Part shown: positions 3,281 to 45,300 of the stretch, one piece after another
How positions within the stretch are numbered: position 1 is the first letter of the stretch
How the letters are laid out: the number at the start of each line of letters is the position of its first letter
From: Haliotis cracherodii
Taxonomy: Eukaryota
Assembly: GCF_022045235.1 (NCBI RefSeq)
Contig: NW_027266286.1
Span: 74,710,001 to 74,774,000, forward strand
Direction: 5' to 3'
DNA: 64,000 bases
Notes under the pieces: model-generated
The model's input: the letters and a program-made list of their open reading frames with translations, nothing else
Told to the model about the DNA's origin: nothing
Database searches by the model: none
Made by a program: the position numbers and the translations under genes

Positions 3281-3927
3281 ATGGATACTGATGTGGCAAC
3301 TGAAGTTCCGGACTCCCTCAAGCGACTGATCCGGCTGATAGTGCGGGGATTTTATACAGTTGAAACAGCCATTGTTATAGACATGCTGGTGAGGAATCCC
3401 TGCATTAAGGAGGATGATATGTTGGAGTTGCTCAAGTTTGAGAGGAAACAACTTCGAGCAATTGTCAACTCCTTGAAAGTAGACAAAATACTGAAAGTGA
3501 GGATGAGGGTTGAAACTGATAGAGAAGGAAAAACCACAAGACACAATTATTATTTCATCAACTACAATGTGTTTGTGAATGTGGTCAAATATAAACTAGA
3601 CCACATGAGAAGAAAGATTGAACTTGAGGAACGCGATAACACAAGTCGTGCCTCGTTTAAATGTCCGAACTGTTTAAAGTCATTTACTGACTTGGAGGTT
3701 GGGCAGCTTGTAGACCCAATGACAGGCTCCTTACAGTGCACCTACTGCCACACAGAGGTGGAGGAGGATGAGAGCTCCATGCCGAAGAAGGATGCTCGCA
3801 CCACCATGGCCAAATTTAATGAACAGATTCAGGTTATTTATGACTTACTACGGGATTGTGAGGATATCAAACTTGCACCTGAAATCTTAGAACCTGAACC
3901 CATTGACATCACAAAGTTATTACCAAG
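3281..3927 (+). CDS. GTF2E1: General transcription factor IIE subunit 1 (TFIIE-alpha), coding exon 1
   Basis: [25 protein letters not shown]... winged helix plus zinc ribbon FKCPNC..CTYC. Ends at AG|GTAAG. Confidence 0.97.
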
Positions 3928-4022
3928 GTAAGTTATGTGTCAATAATCCCTTTTTGCATGTGTTGTTTTACTGTCATCATGGTCATATTCATAATGATAA
4001 TCATGATATCGAGGTTGAAATC

Positions 4023-10189: not shown

Positions 10190-13100
10190 TGTATCAGTTT
10201 ATTCATATATAACTGTAAGGCCACAGGCCCATAGTACAGAATACGTGACAATGTGGAAGCGGTTAGGAATGTTACAAGGATTCATTTCTTAATAACATGG
10301 CATGATATATAAAGAGAGAGAGATTTTGTATAGCCGTTTTGCTCACATGTGAAATTAAAGAGATAAACTTGTATTTATTTGGATGTACATAGTATTTCTG
10401 TTCAATATATTTTTTCCTTAAATTGTCATATTTACAACATACAAGTAGAAAATGAAATTCATCTTCGACAACATTTAAAGAACATTGTTTACATAATCTT
10501 AAACATTTGGGTATTTTGTTGTGCCTGCCAACTTCAACCATTAACCTGTGTGAGCTGCATCTAAATTGTGTTGATGATATTCTGCATTTTCTTATATTTA
10601 CATCAGTTAAATATTTTTCTGCGCATATTTGCATTTTAAAATATCTATAATATTCACATTTGCTAGAAACATCTACAGTAGATCTCCATGTTTGAAAGTA
10701 CATGTCAAAAAGCGTCTGCCTTATTTTCGATATGAACATGGCATGATTCTCTAAGAAACATTGGTTTTCCCAGATGTAACCATACCCACATTTATACAGT
10801 AGACATTTAACATTGTATGCCCAATTTTGATCTCCATTCTTTTCATACAATAGCATCATATTATAACATTTTTTTGGCAATCTACTTACTGGCATTTTTA
10901 GTAATTTTAACCAGTATCTTATGATTTTTAAGTTGTGATATATATACAAGGGCATGCGACCACATTCACCATAAACCATTACGTTAGACTTACTATGTTT
11001 AACACCAAGAAATCTTTTGCATACGTATAAATGTACGGATTCAATTTCTTTAGCCTCTGCAAAACCCCATATTTCTGAACCATAGGAAAGAATAGGAGCT
11101 ATTTTTGTGTCAAAGATTTTGAAAAAAGATTTATAAGCACACTCGCTAAAATGTTCAAACGTTTGTAAAATGCCCAATAGCATCTTTTTAGCTTGGATTG
11201 CTGCATTACATATATGTCGGTTCCATGATAATTTACTTGAAAATATTACACCAAGATATTTATATGAGGTTTCAGTTTGGAGTAATTGTCCCCGAAAGTA
11301 CCACTTTTCGTTTTTTGACAGCGTATTTCCTTTGCTAAATACAACAATTTTTGTCTTATCTAGATTAGCATTAAGTTTCCACGTATCACAGTACAATTCT
11401 AGCTGATTTATCAAAGTTTGTAAACCTTTCACAGTACTCGAGAACATGATTATATCATCTGCAAATAGTAACATAAATATTTTTATAAGTTCAGGATGTA
11501 ATTGTATACCATCATCATAATTTCTTTTGATTTGGGCTGCAAGCTCATTAATAAAAAAACAGAACAAAAAAGGGCTTAATACACATCCTTGGCGTACACC
11601 AGTATGACATATAAAAGAATCTGAATACATGCCGTTTTGTTTAACACATGATTTAACTTCCTTATAAATACCACATAACAATTTACCCATTTTATTACTG
11701 ACACCATGTGAATTAAATAGATACCATAACTTATCTCTACAGACTGAATCGAATGCTTTCGAAAAATCTACAAATATAGCATACAATTTTCCACGTTTAC
11801 GTTGAATATACCTATCTATAAGAGCCTGGAGAATAAACATATTATCAGTGGTTGAGTAACCTTGTCGAAAACCTGCTTGCTCTTCCTCAATCTTATCAAG
11901 TGCTTCCGACCACAATACCAAGCGTTTATTAATAATGCTAAGAAATATCTTACTGAATATACTGGTAAGTGTAATCCCCCTATAGTTTTCAACATCAGTC
12001 ACTGAGCCTTTTTTGTGAATTGGAACGATGGTTCCAAGTGTCCAACCTTTTGGAAAGTAAGAGGTATCCATTATTGTATTGAATAATATTTCCAAATACG
12101 ACAGGGTATTATCAAGAGAGTATTTAAAGAATTCTGTTATAAGTTTATCAAATCCCGGGCTTTTCAAGTTTTTCAGATTTTGAATAACAGATTTAATTTC
12201 TTCTTTTGAGATTGGGGAATCTAATATTTCCGTTGCAAAATTGGTTTCATCATTATCAAAAGAGTTCAACTGGAAGTTATTTGTGGAATCATCACCGCTG
12301 AAAAGATTTTTGAAGTAATTAAACCACTCATGCATTTCGATGTTACTTTTAGTTTCTTTCTTTTTGCTGATGTTTTTCAAGGTCGTCCAAAACTGTTTTG
12401 ATGAGCTGATACTTTCTTCTAGTTTTTCTCTGCTTCTATCCATGAAATTTTGTTTCTTTTTTCTGCAAGTAGCTTTATACTTATTTTTCGAATCAGTGTA
12501 CTTAGCAAGTGAGTCTTTATCCTTTAATTTTCTGAAATGGTTTAAAAGTGTGCATCTTTCCTTTTTTAACAACTCACATTCCCAGTCAAACCACTGTTTA
12601 CTTTCTCTGTTAGGGGTTACTTCCCTTTTCATTACATTCCCTGCATATGTAATAGCTTCTGTAAATAACGATACACTTTCATCAATATTTGTAAAAACAG
12701 AATCAATAGCTTCTCTTAGGAGGCATGCAAAGGTATCTGATAACAGTCGTTCTTGGAAAATATCTGCTTTGCTGTTATCCCACTTAAACATTGAATGACT
12801 ATGGTAGGCGTTTTCAAATGATGTTTTTCCACCTGAATGAAGCGCTCGTAATGACATTGTGATAGGCAGGTGCTGTGATTCGTGGCGTGACTCAATATCA
12901 AAATTTTGGCACAAGTCAAATATATCTATGGTGCTTATAATGTAATCGATAACACTTGCTCCAGCATTGCCAACAAATGTAAAATCACCTTTCTCGGAAT
13001 CACTTCCACAGCGGCCATTCATAATGTGTACATTTAAAACAGCACATAAATTGATAAAACATTTTCCAAAGTTATTAAGAACAGTATCGTTTGAATATCT

Positions 13101-13711
13101 TCACAGATTAAACCTGTCTAAGAGAAAGTCCCAGTATGAAGTGTCCTGGCCATGGAGATATTCAAGTATATCATCCTCTACATAATCTGGCTCTTTGCCA
13201 GTTCTTGCATTAAAGTCACCCCCTAAAATGCACGAAACGTCACCAACATCACCTAGGATGTCAAGCAGTTCATCCTGAAATAGCAATATACCGTTTTTAG
13301 ATCCAACATTACTGTCGTACCATGTAGATCCTTCTGGGTGAATATACACACAGCAGTATAACACGTGTTTTTCAAGTCCAAACAGTGACCTGTCTAGTAA
13401 TAGATATACACCATTTGCTGTGATCCATGAGTTTTTAACATACGCTAAAAGATGCTTTTTTACGAAGACACAAATTCCACCTGAAGGTCTTCCAAAATTT
13501 GCTATCTTGTCTGCTGTCTTAATAAAGTCGGTGTATTCGCAGAACGTATCATCAAAATTTAGTTTCTGGGTCCATGTCTCTGTCAAACCAATTATGTCAA
13601 ATGTTTTTAAAAATGATAGACACTCACAGTCTGATAACTTTGAGAGCAACCCTGAGATATTCCAAAACACTAGTTTCACAGCATTACTGATACTACAAGT
13701 AGGTTCAGACG
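10190..13711 (-). mobile_element. Near-intact 5'-truncated non-LTR retrotransposon (APE endonuclease + RT + C-terminal CCHC; RTE-X-like) inserted in the satellite
   Basis: ORFs 13101-13679 (WNISG, LTETW, GDFNAR) and 10272-13022 (QAGFR, VDFSKAFD, GVRQG, LFADD, RLCKQC..EDEFHFLLVC) are in the same frame, separated by one TGA at 13101-13103. The 3' UTR carries AATAAA. The clade assignment is from motif recollection only. Confidence 0.92.
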
Positions 13712-16700
13712 AATGTTGTATGTGTGTTGTGTGTCACTGTATCAGAGAAACTTGCCAACATCTCTCACGTTGGAGTAATGCTGTATGTGTGTTGTGTGTC
13801 ACTGTATCAGAGAAACTTGCCAACATCTCTCACGTTGGAGTAATGTTGTATGTGTGTTGTGTGTCACTGTATCAGAGAAACTTGCCACAATCTCTCACGT
13901 TGGAGTAATGTTGTATGTGTGTTGTGTGTCACTGTATCAGAGAAACTTGCCACAATCTCTCACGTTGGAGTAATGTTGTATGTGTGTTGTGTCACTGTAT
14001 CAGAGAAACTTGCCAACATCTCTCACGTTGGAGTAATGTTGTATGTGTGTTGTGTGTCACTGTATCAGAGAAACTTGCCACAATCTCTCACGTTGGAGTA
14101 ATGTTGTATGTGTGTTGTGTCACTGTATCAGAGAAACTTGCCAACATCTCTCACGTTGGAGTAATGTTGTATGTGTGTTGTGTGTCACTGTATCAGAGAA
14201 ACTTGCCACAATCTCTCACGTTGGAGTAATGTTGTATGTGTGTGTTGTGTGTCACTGTATCAGAGAAACTTGCCAACATCTCTCACGTTGGAGTAATGTT
14301 GTATGTGTGTTGTGTGTCACTGTATCAGAGAAACTTGCCAACATCTCTCACGTTGGAGTAATGTTGTATGTGTGTTGTGTCACTGTATCAGAGAAACTTG
14401 CCACAATCTCTCACGTTGGAGTAATGTTGTATGTGTGTTGTGTCACTGTATCAGAGAAACTTGCCAACATCTCTCACGTTGGAGTAATGTTGTATGTGTG
14501 TTGTGTGTCACTTTATCAGAGAAACTTGCCAACATCTCTCACGTTGGAGTAATGTTGTATGTGTGTTGTGTGTCACTGTATCAGAGAAACTTGCCAACAT
14601 CTCTCACGTTGGAGTAATGTTATATGTGTGTTGTGTGTCACTGTATCGGAGAAACTTGCCAACATCTCTCATGTTGGAGTAATGTTGTATGTGTGTTGTG
14701 TGTCACTGTATCAGAGAAACTTGCCAACATCTCTCACGTTGGAGTAATGTTGTATGTGTGTTGTGTGTCACTGTATCAGAGAAACTTGCCACAATCTCTC
14801 ACGTTGGAGTAATGTTGTATGTGTGTGTTGTGTGTCACTGTATCAGAGAAACTTGCCAACATCTCTCACGTTGGAGTAATGTTGTATGTGTGTTGTGTGT
14901 CACTGTATCAGAGAAACTTGCCAACATCTCTCACGTTGGAGTAATGTTGTATGTGTGTTGTGTGTCACTGTATCAGAGAAACTTGCCACAATCTCTCACG
15001 TTGGAGTAATGTTGTATGTGAGTTGTGTGTCACTGTATCAGAGAAACTTGCCAACATCTCTCACGTTGGAGTAATGTTGTATGTGTGTTGTGTGTCACTG
15101 TATCAGAGAAACTTGCCAACATCTCTCACGTTGGAGTAATGTTGTATGTGTGTTGTGTGTCACTGTATCAGAGAAACTTGCCAACATCTCTCACGTTGGA
15201 GTAATGTTGTATGTGTGTTGTGTCACTGTATCAGAGAAACTTGCCAACATCTCTCACGTTGGAGTAATGTTGTATGTGTGTTGTGTGTCACTGTATCAGA
15301 GAAACTTGCCACAATCTCTCACGTTGGAGTAATGTTGTATGTGTGTTGTGTCACTGTATCAGAGAAACTTGCCAACATCTCTCACGTTGGAGTAATGCTG
15401 TATGTGTGTTGTGTGTCACTGTATCAGAGAAACTTGCCACAATCTCTCACGTTGGAGTAATGTTGTATGTGTGTGTTGTGTGTCACTGTATCAGAGAAAC
15501 TTGCCAACATCTCTCACGTTGGAGTAATGTTGTATGTGTGTTGTGTGTCACTGTATCAGAGAAACTTGCCAACATCTCTCACGTTGGAGTAATGTTGTAT
15601 GTGTGTTGTGTCACTGTATCAGAGAAACTTGCCACAATCTCTCACGTTGGAGTAATGTTGTATGTGTGTTGTGTCACTGTATCAGAGAAACTTGCCAACA
15701 TCTCTCACGTTGGAGTAATGTTGTATGTGTGTTGTGTGTCACTTTATCAGAGAAACTTGCCAACATCTCTCACGTTGGAGTAATGTTGTATGTGTGTTGT
15801 GTGTCACTGTATCAGAGAAACTTGCCAACATCTCTCACGTTGGAGTAATGTTATATGTGTGTTGTGTGTCACTGTATCGGAGAAACTTGCCAACATCTCT
15901 CATGTTGGAGTAATGTTGTATGTGTGTTGTGTGTCACTGTATCAGAGAAACTTGCCAACATCTCTCACGTTGGAGTAATGTTGTATGTGTGTTGTGTGTC
16001 ACTGTATCAGAGAAACTTGCCACAATCTCTCACGTTGGAGTAATGTTGTATGTGTGTGTTGTGTGTCACTGTATCAGAGAAACTTGCCAACATCTCTCAC
16101 GTTGGAGTAATGTTGTATGTGTGTTGTGTGTCACTGTATCAGAGAAACTTGCCAACATCTCTCACGTTGGAGTAATGTTGTATGTGTGTTGTGTGTCACT
16201 GTATCAGAGAAACTTGCCAACATCTCTCACGTTGGAGTAATGTTGTATGTGTGTTGTGTGTCACTGTATCAGAGAAACTTGCCACAATCTCTCACGTTGG
16301 AGTAATGTTGTATGTGAGTTGTGTGTCACTGTATCAGAGAAACTTGCCAACATCTCTCACGTTGGAGTAATGTTGTATGTGTGTTGTGTGTCACTGTATC
16401 AGAGAAACTTGCCAACATCTCTCACGTTGGAGTAATGTTGTATGTGTGTTGTGTGTCACTGTATCAGAGAAACTTGCCAACATCTCTCACGTTGGAGTAA
16501 TGTTGTATGTGTGTTGTGTGTCACTGTATCAGAGAAACTTGCCAACATCTCTCACGTTGGAGTAATGTTGTATGTGTGTTGTGTGTCACTGTATCAGAGA
16601 AACATGCCAACATCTCTCACGTTGGAGTAATGTTGTATGTGTGTTGTGTGTCACTGTATCAGAGAAACTTGCCAACATCTCTCACGTTGGAGTAATGCTG

Positions 16701-17345
16701 TATGTGTGTTGTGTCACTGTATCAGAGAAACTTGCCAACATCTCTCACGTTGGAGTAATGTTGTATGTGTGTTGTGTGTCACTGTATCAGAGAAACTTGC
16801 CAACATCTCTCACGTTGGAGTAATGTTGTATGTGTGTTGTGTCACTGTATCAGAGAAACTTGCCACAATCTCTCACGTTGGAGTAATGTTGTATGTGTGT
16901 TGTGTGTCACTGTATCGGAGAAACTTGCCAACATCTCTCACGTTGGAGTAATGTTGTATGTGTGTTGTGTCACTGTATCAGAGAAACTTGCCACAATCTC
17001 TCACGTTGGAGTAATGTTGTATGTGTGTTGTGTGTCACTGTATCAGAGAAACTTGCCAACATCTCTCACGTTGGAGTAATGTTGTATGTGTGTTGTGTGT
17101 CACTGTATCAGAGAAACTTGCCAACATCTCTCACGTTGGAGTAATGTTGTATGTGTGTTGTGTGTCACTGTATCAGAGAAACTTGCCAACATCTCTCATG
17201 TTGGAGTAATGTTGTATGTGTGTTGTGTGTCACTGTATCGGAGAAACTTGCCAACATCTCTCACGTTGGAGTAATGCTGTATGTGTGTTGTGTGTCACTG
17301 TACCAGAGAAACTTACCAACATTTACTCATGTTGGAGTAATGTTG
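13712..17345. repeat. 63-67-bp satellite, right arm (~55 units), with a ~1231-bp higher-order duplication
   Basis: Same unit as the left arm. Diagnostic variants recur 1231 bp apart, e.g. CACTTTATC at ~14509 and ~15740. Confidence 0.97.
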
Positions 17346-19109: not shown

Positions 19110-19365
19110 CAGTCAAACCTCATTATCTTGAACCCCGTTCTCTCGAATGTACCGATATCTCGAACCTTGTCTCCGGTCCAGACAACCTTTCTATACCATG
19201 TTCATGCCTCATTATCTCGAACCCCGTTATCTCAAATGTACAGATATCTCGAACCTTGTCCCCGGTCCAGACCACCTTTCTATACCATGTTCATGCCTCA
19301 TTATCTCAAATGTCCGGATATCTCCAAGTTACAAGACGGCCCCTCTAGAATCGAGAGTTTGAATG
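19110..19365. mobile_element. Tc1/mariner-pogo-like MITE with an internal ~84-bp duplication
   Basis: TA-CAGTCAAACCTC ... GAGTTTGAATG-TA termini, TA flanks. Confidence 0.65.
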
Positions 19366-19631
19366 TATTTACTAAAGTGGCAAACATTCGTCATCTTTGA
19401 AATACTGGTACATACTATATGCCTTGTCATGCTAACCTTGACATCTGTCCCGTTTTTTCTTTCCTTCAGTATATGACATTGCAGACTGTCAAATCAGTTA
19501 GCCCAATTTAGCTCTTAACCAAAAAAATTATATTATAAAAAAATATCCAGTTATAAGTAGTTAGTGTTATGTATTAACATCTGCCAACAAAATGCGTAAA
19601 AGAAGGACCAAATTAAGTAAAATAAAGTTGC

Positions 19632-19995
19632 AATGCTACATCATAGAACACACTGATGACAAGAAACGTTACAGTGCTACATCATATAACACACCGATGA
19701 CAAGAAACGTTACAGTACTACATCATATAACACACCTATGACAAGAAACGTTACAGTGCTACATCATAGAACACACTGATGACAAGGAACGTTACAGTGC
19801 TACATCATAGAACACACTGATGACAAGAAACGTTACAGTGCTACATCATAGAACACACTGATGACAAGGAACGTTACAGTGCTACATCATAGAACACACT
19901 GATGACAAGAAACGTTTCAGTGCTACATCATAGAACACACTGATGACAAGAAACGTTACAGTGCTACATCATAGAACACACTGATGACAAGAAAC
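19632..19995. repeat. 41-bp tandem repeat (~9 copies) overlapping the PKS stop codon and 3' UTR
   Basis: Unit GTGCTACATCATAGAACACACTGATGACAAGAAACGTTACA. Confidence 0.95.
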
Positions 19996-22900
19996 ACTTA
20001 TTGGAACCCCTCTCTTCCAAGGTCATGTACCTTTGTTGTCTAAGACGCCCTACAGTAGATCCGGGGTTGTTCAAAGCATCAGTCACAAGACCCAGGAATG
20101 CCTCCACAAGGACACCTGCTCTGGAGGTTGTGAACAGGTCCCTCCTCAGGTGAAACTTGATCTCCATGAGCCTCGTCTCCTTCCTCTGCCAGATGTACAT
20201 GAATGTTTCAGTGGAAGAATCAAAGATAACCGGCATGTCTACTGTCAGCTGGTTGGATGCACTGGTGATGATATCAGTCTCATATATGAAGTAGTTCGTA
20301 CCAAGATTTTTGACCTCGGGAACAAGCTTCTTGATTTCTTCCGATGGATATATTGCATACTTTGTGAAGTGTTGTATAGCCTTGCTGTTGCTCTGTAGGA
20401 ACTCCTGCACAGTGGTAGTTTCCTCTGGCACTTGACAGATTAGAGGAATGAAGTTCGTGCATCTCCCCAACGATCTGGTCAGAGCAGGAACCAGGCCACG
20501 AAGGTCAACCGAGGTTGTGATGGTTGATGTTGTTTTGCTGCTGACAAAGGCAAGAAAGAGCTGGTAGATACTGGCAAGATAGTCAAAGGGTGTGAGACCC
20601 ATATCTCTCGCATACTTCAATATTTTAGTGTACAGGACATTGTTGATTGTTCTTGTGATGAAGATGTGGTCAATTTGCACATTGTGTTTTGTGGGACCTT
20701 TCGAAAGGCTGTTGTATGATATGTACATTGTCTTTGTTTTCCAAAACTGGCTTACTCTCTTGAAGTTTGGAGCAAGAATTTTCTGTATTTCCTTTGCTAT
20801 ATCCTTGTCTGTGTCAGTTACAACATCTACCAGGGGCTTACCCTGTTGTACTGCATTGGCCATGTTTTCAAGTTCTTTTACCAAGATTGTAATTGCTTTT
20901 AAATCAAATGCAAGTCTGTGGAAAACCATTCTGAGCTGTAAAGATCTTCCAAGGAATATGAATCGTAATGGACTCTGGTGTTGAAGATGCATTGGCTCTT
21001 CTGTATGCTTCTTGACCTCAGACATGTCATCTCCAGATAAAATACGGAAGTCGAACGCATTCTCCAAAGTCAACGTGTTTGTGGAGACATTTTCATGGCT
21101 GAAGATGTAAGTTGTTCTAGTGATTGGATGACGTGACACACACTCTTTCGCCACAGCAATCAATGTCGATACGTTTACCACATCCGGTACTGAAATGGTG
21201 CTGACAATTACAAAACCCATGTTGTGTTCACAGTCTGCCCTAAATCCACAGACTGACCTCGCGATTGACATGCTTATTGCCTGCTTACTGATTACAGTCT
21301 CCATGTCACTTGCCTGTGCCTGTTCCTTCTCTGTACCTGACAGGATGTCCAGTATTCTTTTGGCAATGTTGCATGTTGATTGAAGCTGTATTTCGTGAGT
21401 GGACAGCTTTACTCCAATGTCTGACAAGATTCCACCTGTAATTTCCATGGCATACATCGAGTCCACACCTTGATCCTTCATATTGGCGTCCATCTGAAAA
21501 CTGTTTACATCCAACAAAGCCTTATCACACACAAGATGTTTTACATATTCCCGGAGCATCTGCAGCCCTTCTTCCGCTGAGCAGGTACGTAGTTTGTCAA
21601 CATCGCAAGATCGTTTGCCGTCTTCTGATGTTGCCTGTTCATTTAGGATCTTCATGGCAGGTTCCAAATATGTCTTTAATCGCATCATCAAGGTTGTTTC
21701 TTTATCCCTTTGTAATTGTTCTGCCATTTTCTGTCTGTCTATTCTGCACACCAAGGCTTGGGGCTCGTTCAGCATCAGCATGTGTGTAAGACACTGACTG
21801 ACATCCTTCTTATTAATGACCATGTACCCTTGACTCTCCAACTTCTTCAATACAGATCCCTTTTTCTCCAGCATCCCAAGATCGAGAGGTCCCCAATTGA
21901 TACTCTGGCCACTCATTCCTCGCTGTCTTCTGTACACTGCCAATCCATCCAGGAATCCATTACCAGCTCCGTAGTTTGATTGACCAGCATTCCCCAGAAC
22001 AGCTGCCCCAGAAGAATGCAGGACAAAGAAGTCAAGAGGAAGATCTGCGGTCAGGATATGAAGATTCCAAGCACCAGTTACCTTTGGAGACATGGCTGTG
22101 ACAAGTTTTTCCTCTGTCATTTCAGCAAGGGAAGCATCCTGTAAAACAGCTGCCCCGTAGAATATGCCCTTGAGAGGTTTCAGATGTTTCCTTATCTTTA
22201 GTATAGCTGTTTCTATATCCTTGTAGACTGTGACATCAGTTTGAATAGATGTTATGTGACAGTTATGTTGCTGAGATAGATGGTCCATATCCACTTGTGT
22301 TTCAGGATTAGGCTTACGTCTACTCAGAATGATCACGCTTCCAGCGCCTCCTGCTGCAAGGGATGTCACACATTCCCATCCTAGTCCTGTCAGTCCCCCA
22401 ACAACCACATAAGAACCTGTGTCCTGGAACAGGTGGGTACTTGGTGTCATCATGGTTTCCATGTCAAAGTTGCTGTCTGAAGACAAGGACAACTCGGTGC
22501 TATTAAGAACTTCTGAGATGTTTAGTGGGATGACTGTTCCCTGTAGTTTTGAAACCCGGAAGTCATTGAAGCTGTCGCATATTTTGAAGACAGTTTCACT
22601 GTGGGATTTGATCCATTTAATCATTCTGGGTACTGTCTCAAGCATTACCCTCTGAGAAAATATTTCAAATGGTCGTATGACCTGAAGTTGAACGTCTTGC
22701 ACTGCCCCAAACAGGTTCTGGAGGACAGACTTTTTTGTGATTGGTTCAAAGCAAATGATTTTCCGTACATTTGTAAACATTTTCCAAAGTCTTTTGGCTT
22801 CTACTTCTGTCAGTAAAACTGTAGGAATCAATGTCACAAAATCGTCTCTTTGTAGTACAGTTTCATCTGGTTTGACTAATGACACATGTTTTGCCCCTTG

Positions 22901-25900
22901 TGAAAGAAGCAAGTGTGACATTGCATTTGCAAAGGTTTTACTGCTGCTTGAATACAAAATGACTACATTGTTCTTTGCAGTGTGAATGGACATCGACCAC
23001 ATAAGATACAGTGTGGTTAGCTGACTTGGGACATAACCAGGCATGTGTCTTGCATCTATGGTGCAGCTCTTTGGAACTTTGATATTCTTGCAAACATGTG
23101 TAGGAAAGAGGGTAATTTTGTCAGGATGGTTACTTCTTGATTTGGCTGATATTTTTCCAATTGCTTCGAGACACAGAATTGGGTGTATATCTGTTGTGGA
23201 TGCTCTAGGGCGTCCACTGTGAACTCCATGCAACAAAGGGCTATGCACCACCACAGAAGTCACAACAATATCAGTCATATCTTTTGTGGAAGTTGTTGTC
23301 TTTTCTTTTGGGTAGAAAAATGGATTAACTATTGATGTTTTTGATTTTGAGCAGAGCAAACCCTCAGTGTGTTCATCCATTGTAGCTGCCCGAAACACAG
23401 GCTGTGGGTTTGGGTGTGGCAGAATTGTGTTCATGTACATTTTGTCATTGTGGAATTTCATCTCAGGATACCTCATGAAGTCCTCGGATGTGCTTTGTGA
23501 TAATATCCCTGGGAGGCTTGCTAAGAACTTCTCGTCATTGTCGACTAGAACATCCACAAGCTGAATGTGGAGAGCTCTATACTCCCTCAAGACACACCTC
23601 ATGAAACCTTTGACAGCTTCACTAAGACAGCCACTGGCAGCATTATCTCCTGCGTCTCGTATCTCTGAAATGATCACCAGTGGAACAGACACTCCTCTGC
23701 TGGCAGCGTAAAGGGCAATCAGTCTCAAGGACATGATCCTCCTTGTGAGTTCTTTTTGCAGCGATTCTCCCGTGTCTGTTATGAGGTCAGTTACTGCAAA
23801 GACAAAGCAGATTTGCTTGATGTTATGTATGACAGAGTCAAGCGCACGTTTTGTGCCTTCAACTCCCATGTGATCCAATTCATGTATGACACAGGCTAGA
23901 TCCACATTGGTTAGATCTACGTTGGTGAAGATGACTAATCCAGTGTCAACATTGTTCTGAGAAACGTGAAAGGAACCCAAGGGAACCAAGCTTGTTTTGA
24001 ATGTTGCATTGTGAATATCAAAAGTGTCTGATCCTATAAATTTTGTTGTGAATCTTTCAACATGTGCTATGACAGATCCATCAGGTGAAAGAAGTGTCAA
24101 GGTAAATGAGGTGTGTGATCTGGTGGAGTCTGTCATTCTTGCATAAACAAACATTTCGGTCTTCACTGAATGTCTGACAGTTACATTCTTAAGCTCGACT
24201 GGAAGAAATTCTTTTTCTTCCATGTTGAACGCAGCTGCTGACTGCAGCATTCCATCGAGTATTGCCGGATGAATTACAGTGTTGGTCATCTCCTCTTTCA
24301 GCTTTTGTCCAACTGTTAACTTTGTTAGACTTTCAGATTCCCCCCTCAGTGCATAGTTCATAGTTGCAAAGTTAGGACCGTATGTAAATCCTGAATACTT
24401 CAGAGCTTGATACACCTCGTCGCCAGTGACTGTTTCGGTACATCGCTCCTGTATGGCCTCCATGTCCATCCGCTCCTCATCAGGTGCACTGTCGCACACC
24501 AGTATTCTCCCCTTTGCAATGGCAACACCTGTACTTTGGATGGTGAAAGTTTTCGTACAGTCGTTCGCAATTTGATCCTCAACCTCAACATCTAGTTGAA
24601 CAGACATTTCTTTTTTTAAAGTAACTGGATTCAGAAAGCTGACTGATATGATCAGATTTCTAACATTGGCAATATTCATTGACCTTGCGAATCCAAACCC
24701 TGCCTCGACGTAGGTTGCACCTGGGACAACAACAATGTCCTTGATCTTGTGTTCATAGACAGTTCCAAACGTAGATGGGCGGATGTTCAGCATGCATTTG
24801 TCTGTGGAAGATGACAGTTTTACAAAGAGATGATTGCCAGAGTTTCCACTGGATCCAAACACTTCTTCTTCCGTAATTACAGGCAGGATCATTAGGTACT
24901 TGTGCGAGAAGGCATAACACGGCATTGGTGTTGGAGGTTCTGTGTGCGTGAATATTTCCTGCCAGTTTATGTTCACCTTCAGCTGGTACAGCTCAGAGAG
25001 GGTCACCAGCATCGTGTTCTCACTAAACTTAACTGTCAAGGAAGGAAGGCATAGACATGATGGCGAACCTTTTGTAAAAATATCATCCATGTGAGCTTTC
25101 AATACTGGCTGAGGGCCAATCTCTATAAATACATTGAGATGATTGTCAGAGGTAGATCTTTCTATTGCTGATGCGAACTGAACAGGGTTTCGAACATTCT
25201 TACCCCAGTATTCTGATGAATTAACATCCTTCTCTGTGAGGTGAGCATCAGCTGTTGATATCATAGGTATTCTTGCCGGTAACGACTTCAGATTGGCTAG
25301 TACACTGTCCAACTGTATCTTGCTCTGATCCATGTGGTGGCTGTGGTACGCAGCACCAACATGAAGATCAGTCAGTGTAAGATTGCTGTGAGAAAGTTGA
25401 AGACGTGACCTCAAATCATCCACGGCAGCAGAGTCACCACTAACTGCACACGACACAGGACTGTAAGAAAGTGCAATGTTCACGCCTGCAATGTCTTCAC
25501 AAATTTCCTGTACATTGTCCGTTTTAAGGTTTCTGACAAGAAGCATCTTACCACCTGTGGCTTCAGCTAGGATTCGAGACCTGTGGTAGATGACCCTCAC
25601 AGCTTCACTCAGGGACAGGATTCCAGCCATGTGTGCTGCAGCCACCTCTCCCACTGACTGGCCCACAACAACTGCTGGCACCACTCCCCAAGATTCCCAC
25701 TGTTTGGCCAGCGCAACCTGACAAGCAAATATGGCGATCGGACCAAACAGAGGGTCTTCTACGTCATAACCGCTTCTCAGCCTTTTGGTCAATGACCAGG
25801 ACACGAACCTTTTCAAGGACACATCAATCATGTTGATTGTTTTGGAGAAAGTTTTGTTCATTTTCATGAAGCCATCACACATTCCTGACCAAGCAGTGCC

Positions 25901-41070: not shown

Positions 41071-42069
41071 CTATTTTTTCCATATAACATCATATGGCCA
41101 AGTTTTGAATAGCTTCGGGTCGAGTTTTTCGCCCCCAATACGTGGCTCGTAGGCAGAATAATTTAAACTTAATAATAAATCTACCAGTCTGTTTCCATTG
41201 ACATCTGATTTCATAAGTACCCATTCCATAAGAATTGCTGGAACATCTATCTCCTTGAAAAACCTCTTGGCACCTGAGATAACATAGTATTCGTACTCTT
41301 GTATGTCCATTTTTATAACTGCCTTCTTGAAAGGCAGATAGGGCAAGGTGTCGTCAAGAGTTATTGTAAACGAGTCTGCTGATTCCTCGCACGGTGATGC
41401 AGGGGACGAACCCGACGACGCCACAACGTTTGTACCGCCAACGTTGTCCACTTCCCGTTTGAAATTGACAAGGCTATTGTTTGCCCCGAGAGGGTTGAAT
41501 ATGATGGTCATCCTGTCTGTGTAGCCACCCTTCTGAATAGACTTACACAGTCGCTGGACATTCTCTATGAGCGGATCTACAGATACCACCTTCCTCCCGA
41601 ACTTGGCCACAGACAGGGAGTAGGCGCCAACATGAGATCCTAGATCCATGAAGCCAAGCTCAGGGTCCTTGTTCAATTCCGAGCCAATAAGATCGATATT
41701 TTCTGGTTCCCATGTCCCAACCTCCTTTAAAGTTTTGGACACAAACCTGTCGACCACGACGTCGTGTATATGTATCGGTATCGCGCCCGACGACGTCCTC
41801 AGAGGAACGCAGTCCAGGTGAACGGTCCACGTACAGAACTCGTGGAGTTTCTGCATCTGACTACCGTTGAATCTGTACACCTGCGTCTTGCCAGAACTTG
41901 AGCGGGGCTGGGCCCAGTCAATTTTCTCCCACGTCTTTCTAGGTCTGGACGTAGTATCAGCTCCCATCATACTCGTGAAAGGCGGCAGCACAACGTGTTC
42001 TAGGATCAGCAGGATGCATGCGCCAGTGAGCATCATAAGGACAAAAGGCTTCCGGCGTTGCATCGTCAT
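41071..42069 (-). CDS. FkbM-family (Methyltransf_21) SAM-dependent methyltransferase with an N-terminal type II membrane anchor, ~332 aa, single coding exon
   Basis: Acceptor TTTACAG at 42111, then MTMQRRKP and the hydrophobic FVLMMLTGACILLILEHVVL. Motifs: G.WE, FMDLGSHVGAYSL (SAM motif I), VSVDP, ITLDD, IKMDIQEYE, ILMEW. Confidence 0.85.
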   Translation of the reverse strand: MTMQRRKPFVLMMLTGACILLILEHVVLPPFTSMMGADTTSRPRKTWEKIDWAQPRSSSGKTQVYRFNGSQMQKLHEFCTWTVHLDCVPLRTSSGAIPIHIHDVVVDRFVSKTLKEVGTWEPENIDLIGSELNKDPELGFMDLGSHVGAYSLSVAKFGRKVVSVDPLIENVQRLCKSIQKGGYTDRMTIIFNPLGANNSLVNFKREVDNVGGTNVVASSGSSPASPCEESADSFTITLDDTLPYLPFKKAVIKMDIQEYEYYVISGAKRFFKEIDVPAILMEWVLMKSDVNGNRLVDLLLSLNYSAYEPRIGGEKLDPKLFKTWPYDVIWKK

Positions 42070-42377
42070 CGCTGGTTGTGGCTGACTTGATCTGTGGTTA
42101 CAGCTGATGCCTGTAAAGTAGACAACACCAGAATATGACATAGACACAGTGCAACGTACGGTTTTCAGTGAAGTAAGACAAATTAAAGACAATCATAATA
42201 ATAAATTTCAATAAAAAATAAAATAAATAATATTGGACCATAAAGATGTTTATCTGCGGTCGTTCAAAGGTATTACGTTACACAATTTGAAGGACAGGCT
42301 TATATCATGGTGAGTGAGTGAGTAAGTGAGTGAGTGTGGGTCAATATCGACGGTTCGTAGGATCTCCTATCTTGTCA

Positions 42378-45300
42378 ATCAGTTTATTCAGTACATAAAA
42401 GGCCACAGGCCTATAGTACAATGTGTATTTACATGTAGGTGACGTGGTTGTTAACTAACAATTCTGTTTCTATGTGACATCGCGTGATAAACATATGTTG
42501 ATAGGTTACATAACATAGTATCATTAGATGAAGTTAAAAGATCTACAAACTTATGGACATTCGGGTGTACAGAGTAGAAAGATGGTAAATATTCATCACG
42601 TAAATGTTTGTAACCTTGACATACCAGGAGAAAGTGAAACTCAATTGAATTTGTGTTACACAATGTGCATATTCTGTCTCTTCTATCAGTGTGATTATAT
42701 CTACAAGTCTCTATATACAGGTTGTGAGAGGAACATCTAAATCGTGCTAGTACAATTCTAATTTTTTTAAACTCAAGTTTACAGAGGTACGCCTCAATTT
42801 CAATATTACTTTTCATGATTCTATATTTGATTTGGACATTAAATTCTAGCCATTTCTGCAAATACATATCTTTTAGTCTCTGGGTGAAGGACATTAAAAA
42901 GAGCGGTTATGATTCTAAACACTGATTATACCACGCATAATTAAAACCCGTAATAAATAATAATTCTTTTACGTTTGTTACCCAATTACGTTTTCCAGTA
43001 CTGTCGTAGAGTTTTAACATATCATAGCACTTCCTAGGGTTTCTATCATTAGTCATGTTCATCAAGCGAAGCCAGTATTTAATAACTTTTAAGTAGGATT
43101 GAATATACAGTGGATATCGTCCCGTTTCTCCATATACTATTATGCTGAACGTACTATTTTTAACTCCTAAATATTTCTTGCACACAAACAAATGTACTTT
43201 TTCAATTTGATCATGAATTTTTATACCCCAGATTTCAGTACCATAGTGTAGTATTGGAATTATCTTTGTATCAAAATTTTAAAATATGGTCTAAATGAGA
43301 TGTCTCTCAGAAATGGAGACTGTCTAAATATACCAGTCCAAACCTTTTTAGCTTGTATAGCAGCTTGATTGACTTGAAAATGCCATGAAAGTTGATTTGT
43401 GAAATAAACACCAAGATATTTATAGGAAGATGTGGTTTCCAAAATTTCTCCATGGTGAAACTATTTTTCAGTTGATGCTAGTTTTCCCCCACTTTTAAAG
43501 ACTATAACTTTTGTTTTTTAATCTCTATTAACAACTAAGTTTCATTCTTTACATTTTTATTTTATTTTTCATGTTCATTAATTAGCCTTTGCAAACCAAT
43601 CACTGTCGTGGAGCAATGTCTGAAATAATTCCGTAAGATCTGGATGTAACTAAATACCATGGGAGAAATTGTCTTGTATTTAAGTAGCTAATTCATTAAT
43701 GAAAAAAGAAAATAGAAACGGACTCATTATACAGCCTTGTCTAACACCTAAACCAATAGCAAAACTTTCTGACAGTTCGTTATTATTTCTCACGCAGGCT
43801 ATAACATTGGTGTATATACTTCTCAAAAGATTACTCATTTTCAAGCTAATTCCGTGCGATTCTAACACTGTCAATAGTTTTGTTCTATCTACCCTGTCAA
43901 ACGCCTTTGAAAAATCAACGAAAAGTGCATAAACCTTTCTACCTCTTTTACTAAGACATTTCTCTATTAGACTCTGTAGTGTAAAAATATTATCGATGGT
44001 AGAATATCCCTGTCGAAAACCAGCTTGTGCTTCACTAATTTTCCCCATTATATCTGCCCAATTCTGTAATCTTTTATTTATAATGTATATGAACAATTTA
44101 CTAAAGACGCTTAAAAGTGTTATACCTCGGTAGTTATTGGTACTGTTAATAACACCATGTTTATGGATGGGGACAATTATGCCAACCGTCCATGATTCGG
44201 GGAAATTCCCACTCTGTAGAATATGATTAAAAACAAGTGATAAATATGGTATTATGATATCTAAACAGTGTTTGAAGAATTCCGGTAGCATTTTGTCAAT
44301 TCCTGGCGATTTATTGTTTTTAAATTATCTATGCTATTCATTATTTCCTGAAAAGAAATTGGAGAATCTAAAAAGTCAGTTACGACATCATCGGTTTCAC
44401 GAATTCGGTCAAACTCTGTAGTATGTACATGGTCCTTATCCATATCATTACTATTTGATTCGAAAAGAGTTTTAAAGTGAGAAACCCATTCTCCTGAACT
44501 GATATCATAGCCCTGGGAATATTTTCCTCTAAGTTTTCTTAATATTGACCAGAACTGGGTTGAGTCATCTATACTGTTTGCTAAGAGTATCCTTTGTTTT
44601 TGGAAGTAGTTATTTTGTTTTCTATCTACAAATGGCATTGTACTTATTTCTTGCTGCATTATAGAGTTGTAATGAATCCCTGTCTTTAAGTTGTCTAAAC
44701 TTATTTAGGTACTTACACCTCTGTCGTTTCAATTCTTCACATTCTCTATCAAACCACTTATTAACCCTTTCCGAGTAATTAGAACTTTTAACTTTTCTTT
44801 TCATTTCACAGGCAGCTTTCGAGATTGCCTCAACCATACAATCGATACTCTTATTAATATTGACGGACACTTCTTCCTGTGACATGTTTAACACAGTCTG
44901 TGCCTCATCTGTAAGTAAATTTTCTCTGAAAGTTTCACAGCGCTGAACATCCCAAACAAACTTATAATGAGAAACTCTATCACAACGAGAACTATTGTTG
45001 CTACATGGGTGAGGATGAAGCGTCCGTAAAGTCACAGAAACTGGAAGATGTGGAGAGTCAGCACGTGATGAAATCTCGAAATCAGCTACATAGTCAAATA
45101 TAAAAGATGATGCAATTACATAGTCCACAAGACTGGCACCGAGTGATCCAATACATGTGTAATCTCCGCGTCCTGAGGCTGATCCACATCTCCCATTCAT
45201 GATATGTACGTTGAAAATTGAACATAAATCTAGTAAAGATCTACCCAAGGCATTAATGTTCTTATCCACAGAGTAACGTGGTTCTTTAAAATAATCTAGT

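What the first reader, a model, noticed from the sequence alone, without database searches (positions are those of the whole stretch)
20030..21250. C domain has HRxxxD instead of HHxxxDG
Seen: the active-site motif reads V-F-H-R-L-A-F-D-L (20920-20903), so the catalytic second His is replaced by Arg. Established: HRxxxD(G/D) motifs occur in non-elongating C-superfamily members, namely the terminal CON domain of lovastatin synthase LovB and the P450-recruiting X domain of glycopeptide NRPSs. Inference: this domain may be non-canonical (docking, structural role or unusual release chemistry) rather than an ordinary amide synthase, which would imply a trans-acting release or tailoring partner.
Basis: partly seen in the sequence, partly recalled or inferred. 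Interest (0 to 1): 0.8.

Follow-up and report, generated by a model that had tools for sequence, protein, structure and literature searches.

The report
Non-canonical C domain ending abalone PKS
An intact abalone polyketide synthase ends in a well-folded condensation-type domain that has lost the usual catalytic histidine and glycine, a state kept by selection in all five gene copies and shared across molluscs, so the enzyme must finish or release its product by unusual chemistry.

Summary
Codons 20920-20903 (minus strand) read H-R-L-A-F-D, followed by L. They align to HHxxxDG of solved C domains, so both the second His and the Gly are replaced.

The domain is the last domain of an intact six-exon KS-AT-DH-(mid)-KR-ACP-C polyketide synthase. 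The genome is an abalone, probably Haliotis cracherodii.

This is not decay:
- All five Pfam Condensation hits in this genome are PKS-terminal paralogues, and all carry HR at 27-35% identity.
- The Arg codon differs between paralogues (AGA versus CGT).
- dN/dS over the C domain is 0.25-0.53.
- The H. asinina orthologue keeps the C domain at 80% identity, as well as AT and DH.

About 48 related mollusc domains form one clade without a single HH or DG. The Asp is invariant. The second-His position is K, R, A, P, S and others, or the first His is lost instead.

The AlphaFold model (pLDDT 90) is a complete C fold. It is closest to bacterial elongation C domains, not to LovB-CON or the X domain, so the HR motif is convergent.

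Mollusc PKSs with C domains are already published (Lin 2024); I found no mention of the motif state.

The mechanism is untested. My best guess is His-independent chain off-loading. No partner was found.

The parts
19964..30682 (-). Whole PKS gene with six exons. Exon bounds are approximate: 30682-~30488, ~30331-30170, 29811-29605, ~28510-28319, ~26935-26756, 26557-19964 including the stop. Architecture is KS-AT-DH-mid-KR-ACP-C.
   Evidence: tblastn of the H. asinina orthologue P0002 gives five HSPs covering residues 35-2561; the exon parts carry no stops, and the only two stops lie in intron 1, which the first HSP reads through. Introns only at the 5' end match the published pattern for mollusc PKS genes.
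21377..21547 (-). ACP (PP-binding) domain directly upstream of the C domain. It contains GVDSMYAME with the phosphopantetheine serine.
   Evidence: Pfam PF00550 at ORF residues 1642-1698, E-value 0.0032 and 18.1 bits, which is below the family's 20.8-bit cut-off. Identity to H. asinina over the ACP is 92%.
20015..21286 (-). Complete condensation-type (two-lobed CAT-like) fold. The Pfam envelope is 20045-21202.
   Evidence: Pfam PF00668, E-value 1.3e-16. AlphaFold2 gives pLDDT 90.1 and pTM 0.89. Foldseek TM-score is 0.77-0.79 to LgrA, Txo and fuscachelin C domains. VIA gives Z 38, rmsd 2.7 A over 402 residues to LgrA.
20900..20920 (-). Motif C3, H127-R128-L-A-F-D132-L133 in model numbering (ORF residues 1851-1857). 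It stands in place of HHxxxDG.
   Evidence: It is the densest invariant block among the five paralogues, with H, R, A, F and D all invariant.
21116..21133 (-). Motif C2, R56-H57-P-I-T-R61 (canonical RHExLRT), kept.
   Evidence: R56 and H57 are invariant in the five paralogues. The role of these residues is given in PMC1894796 Table 1.
20498..20506 (-). D265-L-R267. R267 corresponds to the structural Arg that pairs with the motif Asp (VibH R263 / EntF R278).
   Evidence: Conserved in at least 90% of the 31-sequence family alignment A1. Coordinates. Residue role from PMC1894796. The equivalence rests on motif order and is an inference.
20741..20743 (-). W186 of the FW motif (folding Trp of C domains), invariant in the family.
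   Evidence: Invariant column in A1. Coordinates.
19967..19978 (-). C-terminal CSMM, a CaaX-like box, followed by the stop codon at 19964-19966.
   Evidence: The H. asinina orthologue ends CSLM and paralogue L002 (= P0003) ends CSLL.
19627..19995 (-). 41-bp tandem repeat, 9 copies, starting inside the last ten codons and filling the proximal 3' UTR. Each unit repeats TGT TCT ATG ATG TAG.
   Evidence: RNA-like contigs break up into short, high-depth pieces here.

Best explanation
WHAT IT IS (confidence about 0.95). This is the terminal domain of an intact, apparently transcribed iterative type I polyketide synthase of an abalone. The gene belongs to the published mollusc 'PKS with C domain' clade. 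The domain is a full NRPS-type condensation fold placed directly after the ACP.

Its C3 motif reads HRxxxD(L/F/Y/R) in place of HHxxxDG. That state is fixed by purifying selection in all five paralogues of this genome and in the H. asinina orthologue. It is one version of a clade-wide condition in molluscs: Asp invariant, Gly never present, second His replaced by K, R, A, P, S and others, or the first His lost instead.

HOW IT MOST LIKELY WORKS (inferred, about 0.4 on its own). The domain is the synthase's only cis candidate for chain termination. I propose three steps:
1. It takes the finished acyl-S-ACP into the donor side of the C-domain tunnel.
2. It off-loads the chain without a His general base. 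Transfer would go to a nucleophile that is not carrier-bound (an amine, an alcohol or water) or to an internal nucleophile.
3. Catalysis comes from substrate positioning by the Asp-anchored C3 loop. In Haliotis the Arg supplies a positive charge that could bind an anionic acceptor or stabilise the oxyanion.

The CaaX-like C-terminus hints that this may happen at a membrane.

Shown: the fold, the motif state, selection, the family distribution, and the absence of any other release domain. Not shown: any activity, the acceptor, or the product.
For: Identity and integrity:
- Pfam finds the KS C-terminus, AT, DH, KR, ACP and Condensation domains.
- Six exons without stops match the H. asinina protein end to end.
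- In runs X1 and X5, single contigs of 7.4 kb and 5.2 kb from a relative about 97.7% identical run uninterrupted from the stop codon through C, ACP and KR. Depth is 0 at 19201-19600. The RNA status of these runs is only a guess.

Selection:
- Five PKS-C paralogues all carry HR. They are the only Pfam Condensation hits in the 1.18-Gb genome.
- The Arg codon is AGA in three paralogues and CGT in two.
- Only 47 of 380 columns are invariant among the five paralogues, yet H127, R128, A130, F131 and D132 all are.
- Nei-Gojobori dN/dS over the C domain is 0.25 for L004/L005 and 0.53 for L002/L003.
- Against H. asinina the C domain is 80% identical. For comparison: AT 79%, DH 78%, KS part 80%, mid region 71%, linkers 68-71%.

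Family:
- 48 related terminal domains show HK 14, HR 6, HA 6, NH 6, HP 5 and others. Asp is 48 of 48. Gly after Asp is 0 of 48.
- They form one clade (SH-aLRT 98) apart from HH-bearing NRPS domains.
- Named members are chiton, limpet, snail, scallop, mussel, clam and pearl oyster.

Release role:
- Every full-length member is KS-AT-DH-(mid)-KR-(ACP)-C with only a short tail and no TE or R domain.
- The C domain diverges faster between paralogues (35%) than AT, KR or DH (59%, 60%, 42%) while staying conserved between orthologues. This is what one expects of a specificity-bearing domain.
- The structural key residues listed by Rausch 2007 are kept: C2 Arg, first His, Asp, Trp and the pairing Arg.
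- A review notes that the second His is not always essential (PMC11546977).
Against: - No activity, product or acceptor is known for any member of the clade.
- The second-His position is not conserved across the clade (R, K, A, P, S, V, G, I). No shared catalytic side chain sits there.
- The Gly rated as catalytically important (PMC1894796) is absent in all members.
- In glycopeptide X domains the same two substitutions are described as inactivating the domain and blocking the access channel (PMC6565677).
[quoted passage not shown] There the Arg is dispensable and the Asp is required (PMC13492342).
- I could not inspect the model's coordinates, so I do not know whether the tunnels are open.
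- Transcription rests on contigs whose RNA origin is only guessed.
Confidence: 0.45

Rival explanations
1. CON-like accessory domain. As in LovB-type fungal iterative PKSs, the terminal C-like domain is needed for correct programming, folding or cyclisation of the ACP-bound chain but transfers nothing. A separate hydrolase releases the product.
For: The architecture is the same: reducing iterative PKS, then ACP, then a C-like domain with HRxxxD. In the A. clavatus LovB-like PKS the C domain is essential, the Arg is dispensable and the Asp is indispensable (PMC13492342). Here too the Asp is the only invariant motif residue (48 of 48) while the second-His position varies. The domain is under purifying selection.
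Against: By sequence and structure it is not a relative of CON beyond the shared superfamily. Profile bits are 59.9/54.1 for MokA/LovB CON against 123.6 for LgrA. VIA Z is 33.3 against 38. LovB-like domains keep the Gly, and the mollusc clade never does. No thioesterase-type (PF00975) or LovG-type (PF03959) gene lies near any of the five paralogues, though animal pathway genes need not cluster.
Confidence: 0.3
2. Catalytically dead scaffold. The domain is an X-domain-like docking platform for a trans-acting enzyme, or a dimerisation or localisation module, with the old active site filled in.
For: Both substitutions that define X domains are present: second His to Arg and loss of Gly. In X domains they are said to inactivate the domain and block the channel (PMC6565677; PMC1894796). 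The profile matches the X domain well (4tx2, 82.4 bits; TM-score 0.75).
Against: X domains sit inside an NRPS termination module, before a TE, and recruit Oxy P450s. There is no such context here. No partner was found nearby. The most conserved block among the paralogues is the old active-site loop itself together with canonical core motifs, not a surface patch. This is weak evidence, because these residues also hold the fold together.
Confidence: 0.17
3. Decaying relic. The C domain is a non-functional remnant of a former PKS-NRPS hybrid and is drifting.
For: The canonical catalytic His and Gly are gone. dN/dS is higher over the C domain than over KR (0.25 against 0.12, and 0.53 against 0.30).
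Against: - There are no stops or frameshifts in any of the five paralogues.
- HR is kept through synonymous codon change.
- Identity to H. asinina is 80%, equal to AT and DH.
- The model is confident (pLDDT 90) and shows a complete fold.
- The domain is retained across mollusc classes.
Confidence: 0.03

Closest known systems
Mollusc 'canonical animal PKS' clade with C-terminal condensation domains (Lin, Li, Krug and Schmidt, Nat Commun 2024, PMC10764717)
   Same: The architecture ends in a C domain. Few introns are present and all lie at the N-terminus. The clade occurs in Polyplacophora, Gastropoda and Bivalvia (one search compared).
   Different: The passages of the paper that my term searches returned describe the C domains only as 'from nonribosomal peptide biosynthesis' and say nothing about their active-site motif. 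I did not read the whole paper or its supplement. No product or function is assigned to these enzymes.
LovB-like fungal iterative PKS CON domain (LovB, MokA, A. clavatus clavaic acid PKS)
   Same: A terminal C-like domain follows the ACP of a reducing iterative PKS. The second His is Arg and the Asp is conserved. The function is not amide formation.
   Different: Fungal domains keep the Gly (HRxxxDG), and the abalone domain has Leu. Sequence and structure are more distant than to bacterial elongation C domains. The shared HR is therefore convergent.
X domain of glycopeptide antibiotic NRPSs (Tcp12, kistamicin)
   Same: A C fold with HRxxxD(D/E), in which both the second His and the Gly are lost.
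   Different: The X domain lies in an NRPS module before a TE and recruits Oxy P450s. Here the domain is the last domain of a PKS, and neither a TE nor a P450 partner was identified.
Bacterial LCL elongation C domains (for example LgrA, fuscachelin, TomB, SrfA-C)
   Same: These are the best sequence-profile and structural matches, and motifs C2, C4/5, C5 and C7 are all recognisable.
   Different: They carry HHxxxDG and join two carrier-bound substrates. Here there is no downstream carrier protein, no second His and no Gly.
Terminal or free-standing C-family transferases that use soluble acceptors (VibH; the truncated fungal PKS-C cited as Hai and Tang 2018 in PMC13492342; PapA5 from my own knowledge)
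   Same: The position and logic match: an acyl-S-carrier donor and a soluble acceptor. VibH aligns structurally with Z 32.4.
   Different: Those enzymes keep HHxxxDG. No acceptor is known here.

Membership tests
NRPS condensation-domain superfamily (Pfam PF00668) | Sequence match above the curated cut-off | tested here: met
   60.9 bits against a cut-off of 30.6, E-value 1.3e-16. The family profile scores 123.6 bits against the LgrA C domain.
NRPS condensation-domain superfamily (Pfam PF00668) | Two-lobed CAT-like fold | tested here: met
   The AlphaFold2 model has pLDDT 90.1. VIA gives Z 38 over 402 residues. Foldseek TM-score is 0.78.
Catalytically canonical C domain (LCL/DCL/starter) | HHxxxDG with the second His and the Gly present | tested here: not met
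   The motif is HRLAFDL. Not one of the 48 clade members has both.
Catalytically canonical C domain (LCL/DCL/starter) | A downstream carrier-bound acceptor (an A-T module after the C domain) | tested here: not met
   The protein ends 26 residues after the Pfam C-domain match, whose last residue is 2142 of 2168.
LovB-like fungal CON domain | Terminal position after the ACP of a reducing iterative PKS | tested here: met
   Domain order is KS-AT-DH-mid-KR-ACP-C.
LovB-like fungal CON domain | HRxxxDG motif | tested here: not met
   H, R and D are present but the Gly is Leu. Gly is absent in 48 of 48 clade members.
LovB-like fungal CON domain | Closer kinship to CON than to other C subtypes | tested here: not met
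   Profile bits are MokA 59.9 and LovB 54.1, against LgrA 123.6, X domain 82.4 and psoA C 73.8.
Glycopeptide X domain | HRxxxD(D/E/R) with the Gly lost | tested here: inconclusive
   HR is present and Gly is lost, but the replacement is hydrophobic (L, F or Y, with one paralogue carrying R), not acidic.
Glycopeptide X domain | Location in the last NRPS module before a TE, and recruitment of Oxy P450s | tested here: not met
   There is no A, T or TE context. P450 binding is not testable with these tools.
Mollusc PKS clade with C domain (PMC10764717) | Animal-type PKS ending in a C domain, introns confined to the N-terminus, mollusc host | tested here: met
   Kinship of the KS domain to their clade was not tested by a tree here.

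The most novel reading that the evidence does not exclude
Molluscs carry an ancient, expanded subtype of the condensation-domain superfamily. It always ends an iterative PKS and dispensed with both the catalytic His and the Gly before the mollusc classes diverged. A basic residue (R or K in 20 of 48 members) has appeared repeatedly at the old His position, as it did independently in fungal CON and bacterial X domains. If these domains are active, they define a new, Asp-dependent chain-release chemistry in animals. In some members this may be tied to membranes through a prenylated CaaX tail.
Probability: 0.3. Interest if true: 0.75.

Novelty: new variant of a known kind. Interest (0 to 1): 0.5.

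Why it matters
No product or function has been assigned to these mollusc PKS-C enzymes in the source I read (PMC10764717). How they release their product is the step that decides what kind of molecule is made: acid, amide, ester, lactone or polyene.

A whole mollusc clade keeps a full C fold under selection while lacking the two residues usually taken as catalytic. This gives a natural test case for the long debate on what the second His of C domains really does. It also gives a third, independent example beside fungal CON and bacterial X domains of His-to-Arg/Lys replacement.

In practical terms, genome-mining pipelines that label these proteins 'PKS-NRPS hybrid' or predict amide products are probably wrong.

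Tried and rejected
I therefore could not fetch the H. asinina or Logan DNA.
- Single-sequence phmmer against the PDB was too weak to rank subtypes (best E-value 0.0055). Only the 31-sequence profile resolved them.
- NCBIfam gave nothing useful for the domain.
- The search for a linked partner found nothing. The FkbM-like methyltransferase at 41071-42192 is one of at least 28 dispersed copies, and none is near another paralogue. PF00975 and PF03959 hits lie on other contigs. The remaining window ORFs are retroelement parts or TFIIE-alpha.
- Literature searches for abalone or animal PKS plus condensation domain found no paper on the motif. Only Lin 2024 mentions the architecture.
- I considered that His at the C7 'R(N/H)PLF' position might be a relocated base. 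I rejected this because LgrA has RH there too. The pairwise and family alignments also differ by one residue at that point, so whether the Haliotis Asn (N335) is equivalent to VibH N335 remains inconclusive.
- The careful tree did not finish in the time allowed. The quick IQ-TREE tree was used. P0012 and some other rows sit on long branches, so the count of independent HR origins (Haliotis, Patella, P0061) is tentative.
- Model coordinates cannot be read with these tools, so tunnel occlusion by R128 and L133 was not assessed.
Full report
OBSERVATION. The minus strand of 20929-20897 translates to MVFHRLAFDLK. The 18 bases encoding H-R-L-A-F-D lie exactly at 20920-20903 and occur once in the window. 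They sit inside a 2168-codon open frame, 19964-26470. Pfam places a Condensation domain (PF00668; E-value 1.3e-16, 60.9 bits against a cut-off of 30.6) in its last 400 residues. HMMER aligns FHRLAFDL onto SHHILLDG of the LgrA C domain. The register is therefore canonical: first His kept, second His changed to Arg, Asp kept.

THE GENE. The window is animal DNA.
- Upstream of the large exon lie five short exons that complete the ketosynthase. tblastn with the H. asinina protein P0002 covers residues 35-2561. The exon parts carry no stop; the only two stops lie in intron 1, which the first HSP reads through.
- Pfam gives KS (C-terminal part), AT, DH, KR, ACP and C, with a roughly 520-residue unassigned 'mid' region. 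The PP-binding match is weak: 18.1 bits against a cut-off of 20.8.
- The best database hits are Haliotis proteins: H. rufescens 98%, H. asinina 79%, and an H. cracherodii paralogue at 34%.
- The translation of paralogue locus L002 from this genome is identical to the last 956 residues of that H. cracherodii protein. The genome is therefore very probably H. cracherodii.
- Few introns, all at the 5' end, is the pattern published for mollusc PKS genes. The same paper records that part of the mollusc PKS clade ends in a C domain (PMC10764717).

TRANSCRIPTION. In public runs of a relative about 97.7% identical, single contigs of 7.4 kb and 5.2 kb run without joints from 12 bases (X1) or 5 bases (X5) past the stop codon through C, ACP, KR and the mid region. 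Depth is zero at 19201-19600. This looks like mRNA, but the RNA status of these runs is only a guess.

IS HR FIXED OR DECAYING? A six-frame search of the whole 1.18-Gb assembly finds four further copies of the domain. Three are in open frames of more than 2100 codons and one is in a frame of 770 codons.
- A Pfam PF00668 search finds these same five places and nothing else.
- All five read H-R-x-A-F-D: FHRLAFDL, FHRVAFDF, LHRVAFDR and FHRIAFDY twice. Identity to the window copy over the domain is only 29-34%.
- The Arg is encoded by AGA in three copies and CGT in two, so it has been kept through synonymous change.
- Only 47 of 380 ungapped columns are invariant among the five copies, yet H127, R128, A130, F131 and D132 all are. 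This is the densest invariant block.
- Nei-Gojobori dN/dS over the C domain is 0.25 for L004/L005 (KR 0.12) and 0.53 for L002/L003 (KR 0.30).
- Against the H. asinina orthologue the C domain is 80% identical. AT is 79%, DH 78%, the KS part 80%, the mid region 71% and the linkers 68-71%.
- Against the paralogue the C domain is among the fastest-diverging parts: 35%, against 59-60% for AT and KR.

The domain is therefore constrained within a lineage and diversified between copies. Simple decay is excluded.

THE WIDER FAMILY. A full HMMER scan of 1.84 billion representative proteins with the domain gave 198 hits.
- A local HMM built from the five paralogues ranks about 48 domains first. Nearly all of them end proteins of 2200-2800 residues with the order KS-AT-DH-(mid)-KR-(ACP)-C. 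Tails are short and there is no TE or R domain.
- Those that carry a name are molluscs: Patella, the chiton Liolophura, Pecten, Mytilus, Sinanodonta, Mya, Pinctada and Bradybaena.
- Their C3 motifs are HK 14, HR 6, HA 6, NH 6, HP 5, HS 2, SH 2 and single others. Asp is present in 48 of 48. The residue after Asp is L, M, F, I or Y, and never G.
- In a quick maximum-likelihood tree these 50 rows, including the five paralogues, form one clade (SH-aLRT 98). The clade is separate from HH-bearing NRPS domains and from an amphioxus PKS-C that has HH...DT.
- The Haliotis copies plus H. asinina form a subclade (SH-aLRT 97) in which all are HR. HR also appears in a Patella protein and in P0061 inside an NH subclade, which suggests repeated origin. 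This last point is tentative because of long branches.

Loss of the canonical motif is therefore old and clade-wide, and the HR version is the Haliotis state.

STRUCTURE AND KINSHIP. AlphaFold2 with a 31-sequence alignment (A1) gives pLDDT 90.1 and pTM 0.89. H127 and R128 end a strand and D132 precedes the following helix.
- Foldseek and VIA-align place the model on elongation C domains: LgrA with TM-score 0.78, Z 38 and rmsd 2.7 A over 402 residues.
- MokA CON scores Z 33.3 and TM-score 0.72. VibH scores Z 32.4. The X domain scores TM-score 0.75.
- The A1 profile scores LgrA 123.6 bits, X domain 82.4, MokA/LovB CON 59.9/54.1, TqaA CT 41 and VibH 30.8.
- The structural key residues tabulated by Rausch et al. 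2007 (PMC1894796) are kept: the C2 Arg (R56), the first His (H127), the Asp (D132), the folding Trp (W186) and the Arg that pairs with the Asp (R267). The two rated catalytic in the motif, the second His and the Gly, are gone.

The fold is whole. The likeness to CON and X is confined to the motif and is convergent.

WHAT IS KNOWN ABOUT SUCH MOTIFS.
- LovB-like fungal iterative PKSs end in a C domain with HRxxxDG. In the A. clavatus enzyme the domain is essential, the Arg is dispensable and the Asp is indispensable. The mechanism is unknown (PMC13492342. CON structure: PMC6260248).
- Glycopeptide X domains carry HRxxxD(D/E). They are described as inactive with a blocked channel, and they recruit P450s (PMC6565677, PMC11546977).
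- The role of the second His in ordinary C domains is itself debated, and it is not always essential (PMC11546977).

MECHANISM. Nothing here measures activity, so this part is inference.

I favour chain off-loading without a His base, at about 0.4. The reasons are:
- The C-type domain is the only candidate terminating domain in every member.
- It follows the ACP directly.
- It is conserved between orthologues as well as AT and DH.
- It diverges between paralogues as a specificity domain would.
- It keeps the core of the old active-site region.

The main rival, at about 0.3, is a CON-like accessory role with release by a separate hydrolase. The parallel 'Asp invariant, second-His position free' fits it well. 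Against it, no thioesterase-type or LovG-type gene is near any paralogue, which is weak evidence in an animal.

A dead X-like scaffold, at about 0.17, is suggested by the double loss of His and Gly. I found no partner.

A decaying relic, at about 0.03, is close to excluded.

NOVELTY. The gene is annotated in relatives, and mollusc PKSs with C domains are published. I did not find in the searchable literature that these domains lack both the second His and the Gly across the clade, with HR fixed in Haliotis and basic residues recurring. I rate it a new variant of a known kind and of moderate interest. It sharpens a testable question rather than revealing a new system.

I confirm that.

Noticed in passing
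window 19967-19978 (minus); L002; P0002; P0018: The protein ends in CSMM, a CaaX-like prenylation box preceded by basic residues. The H. asinina orthologue ends CSLM and paralogue L002 (= P0003) ends CSLL, although the tails are otherwise poorly conserved. P0018, whose cluster includes a land-snail (Bradybaena) protein, ends CAVQ. Paralogues L003, L004 and L005 lack it. A prenylated, membrane-anchored PKS would be unusual.
   Followed up: partly
window 19627-19995: A 41-bp tandem repeat of 9 copies at 95% identity starts inside the last ten codons of the PKS. Every unit re-encodes TGT TCT ATG ATG TAG (CSMM-stop). The gene's 3' end has therefore been amplified into its own 3' UTR. RNA-like contigs fragment here at high depth.
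   Followed up: partly
P0001 compared with window 22435-23515 and 19964-20050: The H. rufescens database protein (2201 aa) omits about 360 residues of the mid region and has a different C-terminus. Contigs of a close relative cover these stretches without any joint. The database model probably contains false introns.
   Followed up: partly
window 41071-42192 (minus): An intronless 373-codon ORF with an FkbM-type methyltransferase domain (Pfam E-value 3.7e-5) lies about 10 kb upstream of the PKS on the same strand. It belongs to a family of at least 28 copies scattered over the genome, and none is near the other PKS-C paralogues.
   Followed up: yes
G000:C23:14403586-14404842 (L005): One of the five PKS-C paralogues has an open frame of only 770 codons, starting inside KR. 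The others exceed 2100 codons. This could be an extra intron or a truncated copy. Its C domain still shows dN/dS 0.25 against L004.
   Followed up: no
window 13800-17345: A 65-bp satellite of about 55 copies at 95% identity lies between a LINE-like element and the PKS 3' end. It explains the series of 104-106-codon ORFs on the plus strand.
   Followed up: partly
window 10272-13679 and 43680-44291: A LINE-type retroelement with a 916-codon ORF carrying reverse transcriptase and an adjacent endonuclease/exonuclease/phosphatase ORF. A second reverse-transcriptase fragment lies further on.
   Followed up: partly
window 30750-31250 and 31791-32559: A CA/TG-rich microsatellite tract lies directly upstream of the PKS start codon. 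A 20-bp minisatellite of about 38 copies lies a further 1 kb upstream.
   Followed up: no
window 3281-3931 (plus): An ORF with TFIIE-alpha and a TFIIB-type zinc ribbon (Pfam E-value 1.4e-25), probably an exon of the general transcription factor gene.
   Followed up: no
P0062 (Branchiostoma floridae, 3113 aa): An amphioxus PKS also ends in a C-type domain but keeps HH (LHHIATDT). In the tree it groups with NRPS C domains rather than with the mollusc clade. Terminal C domains on animal PKSs may have more than one origin.
   Followed up: partly
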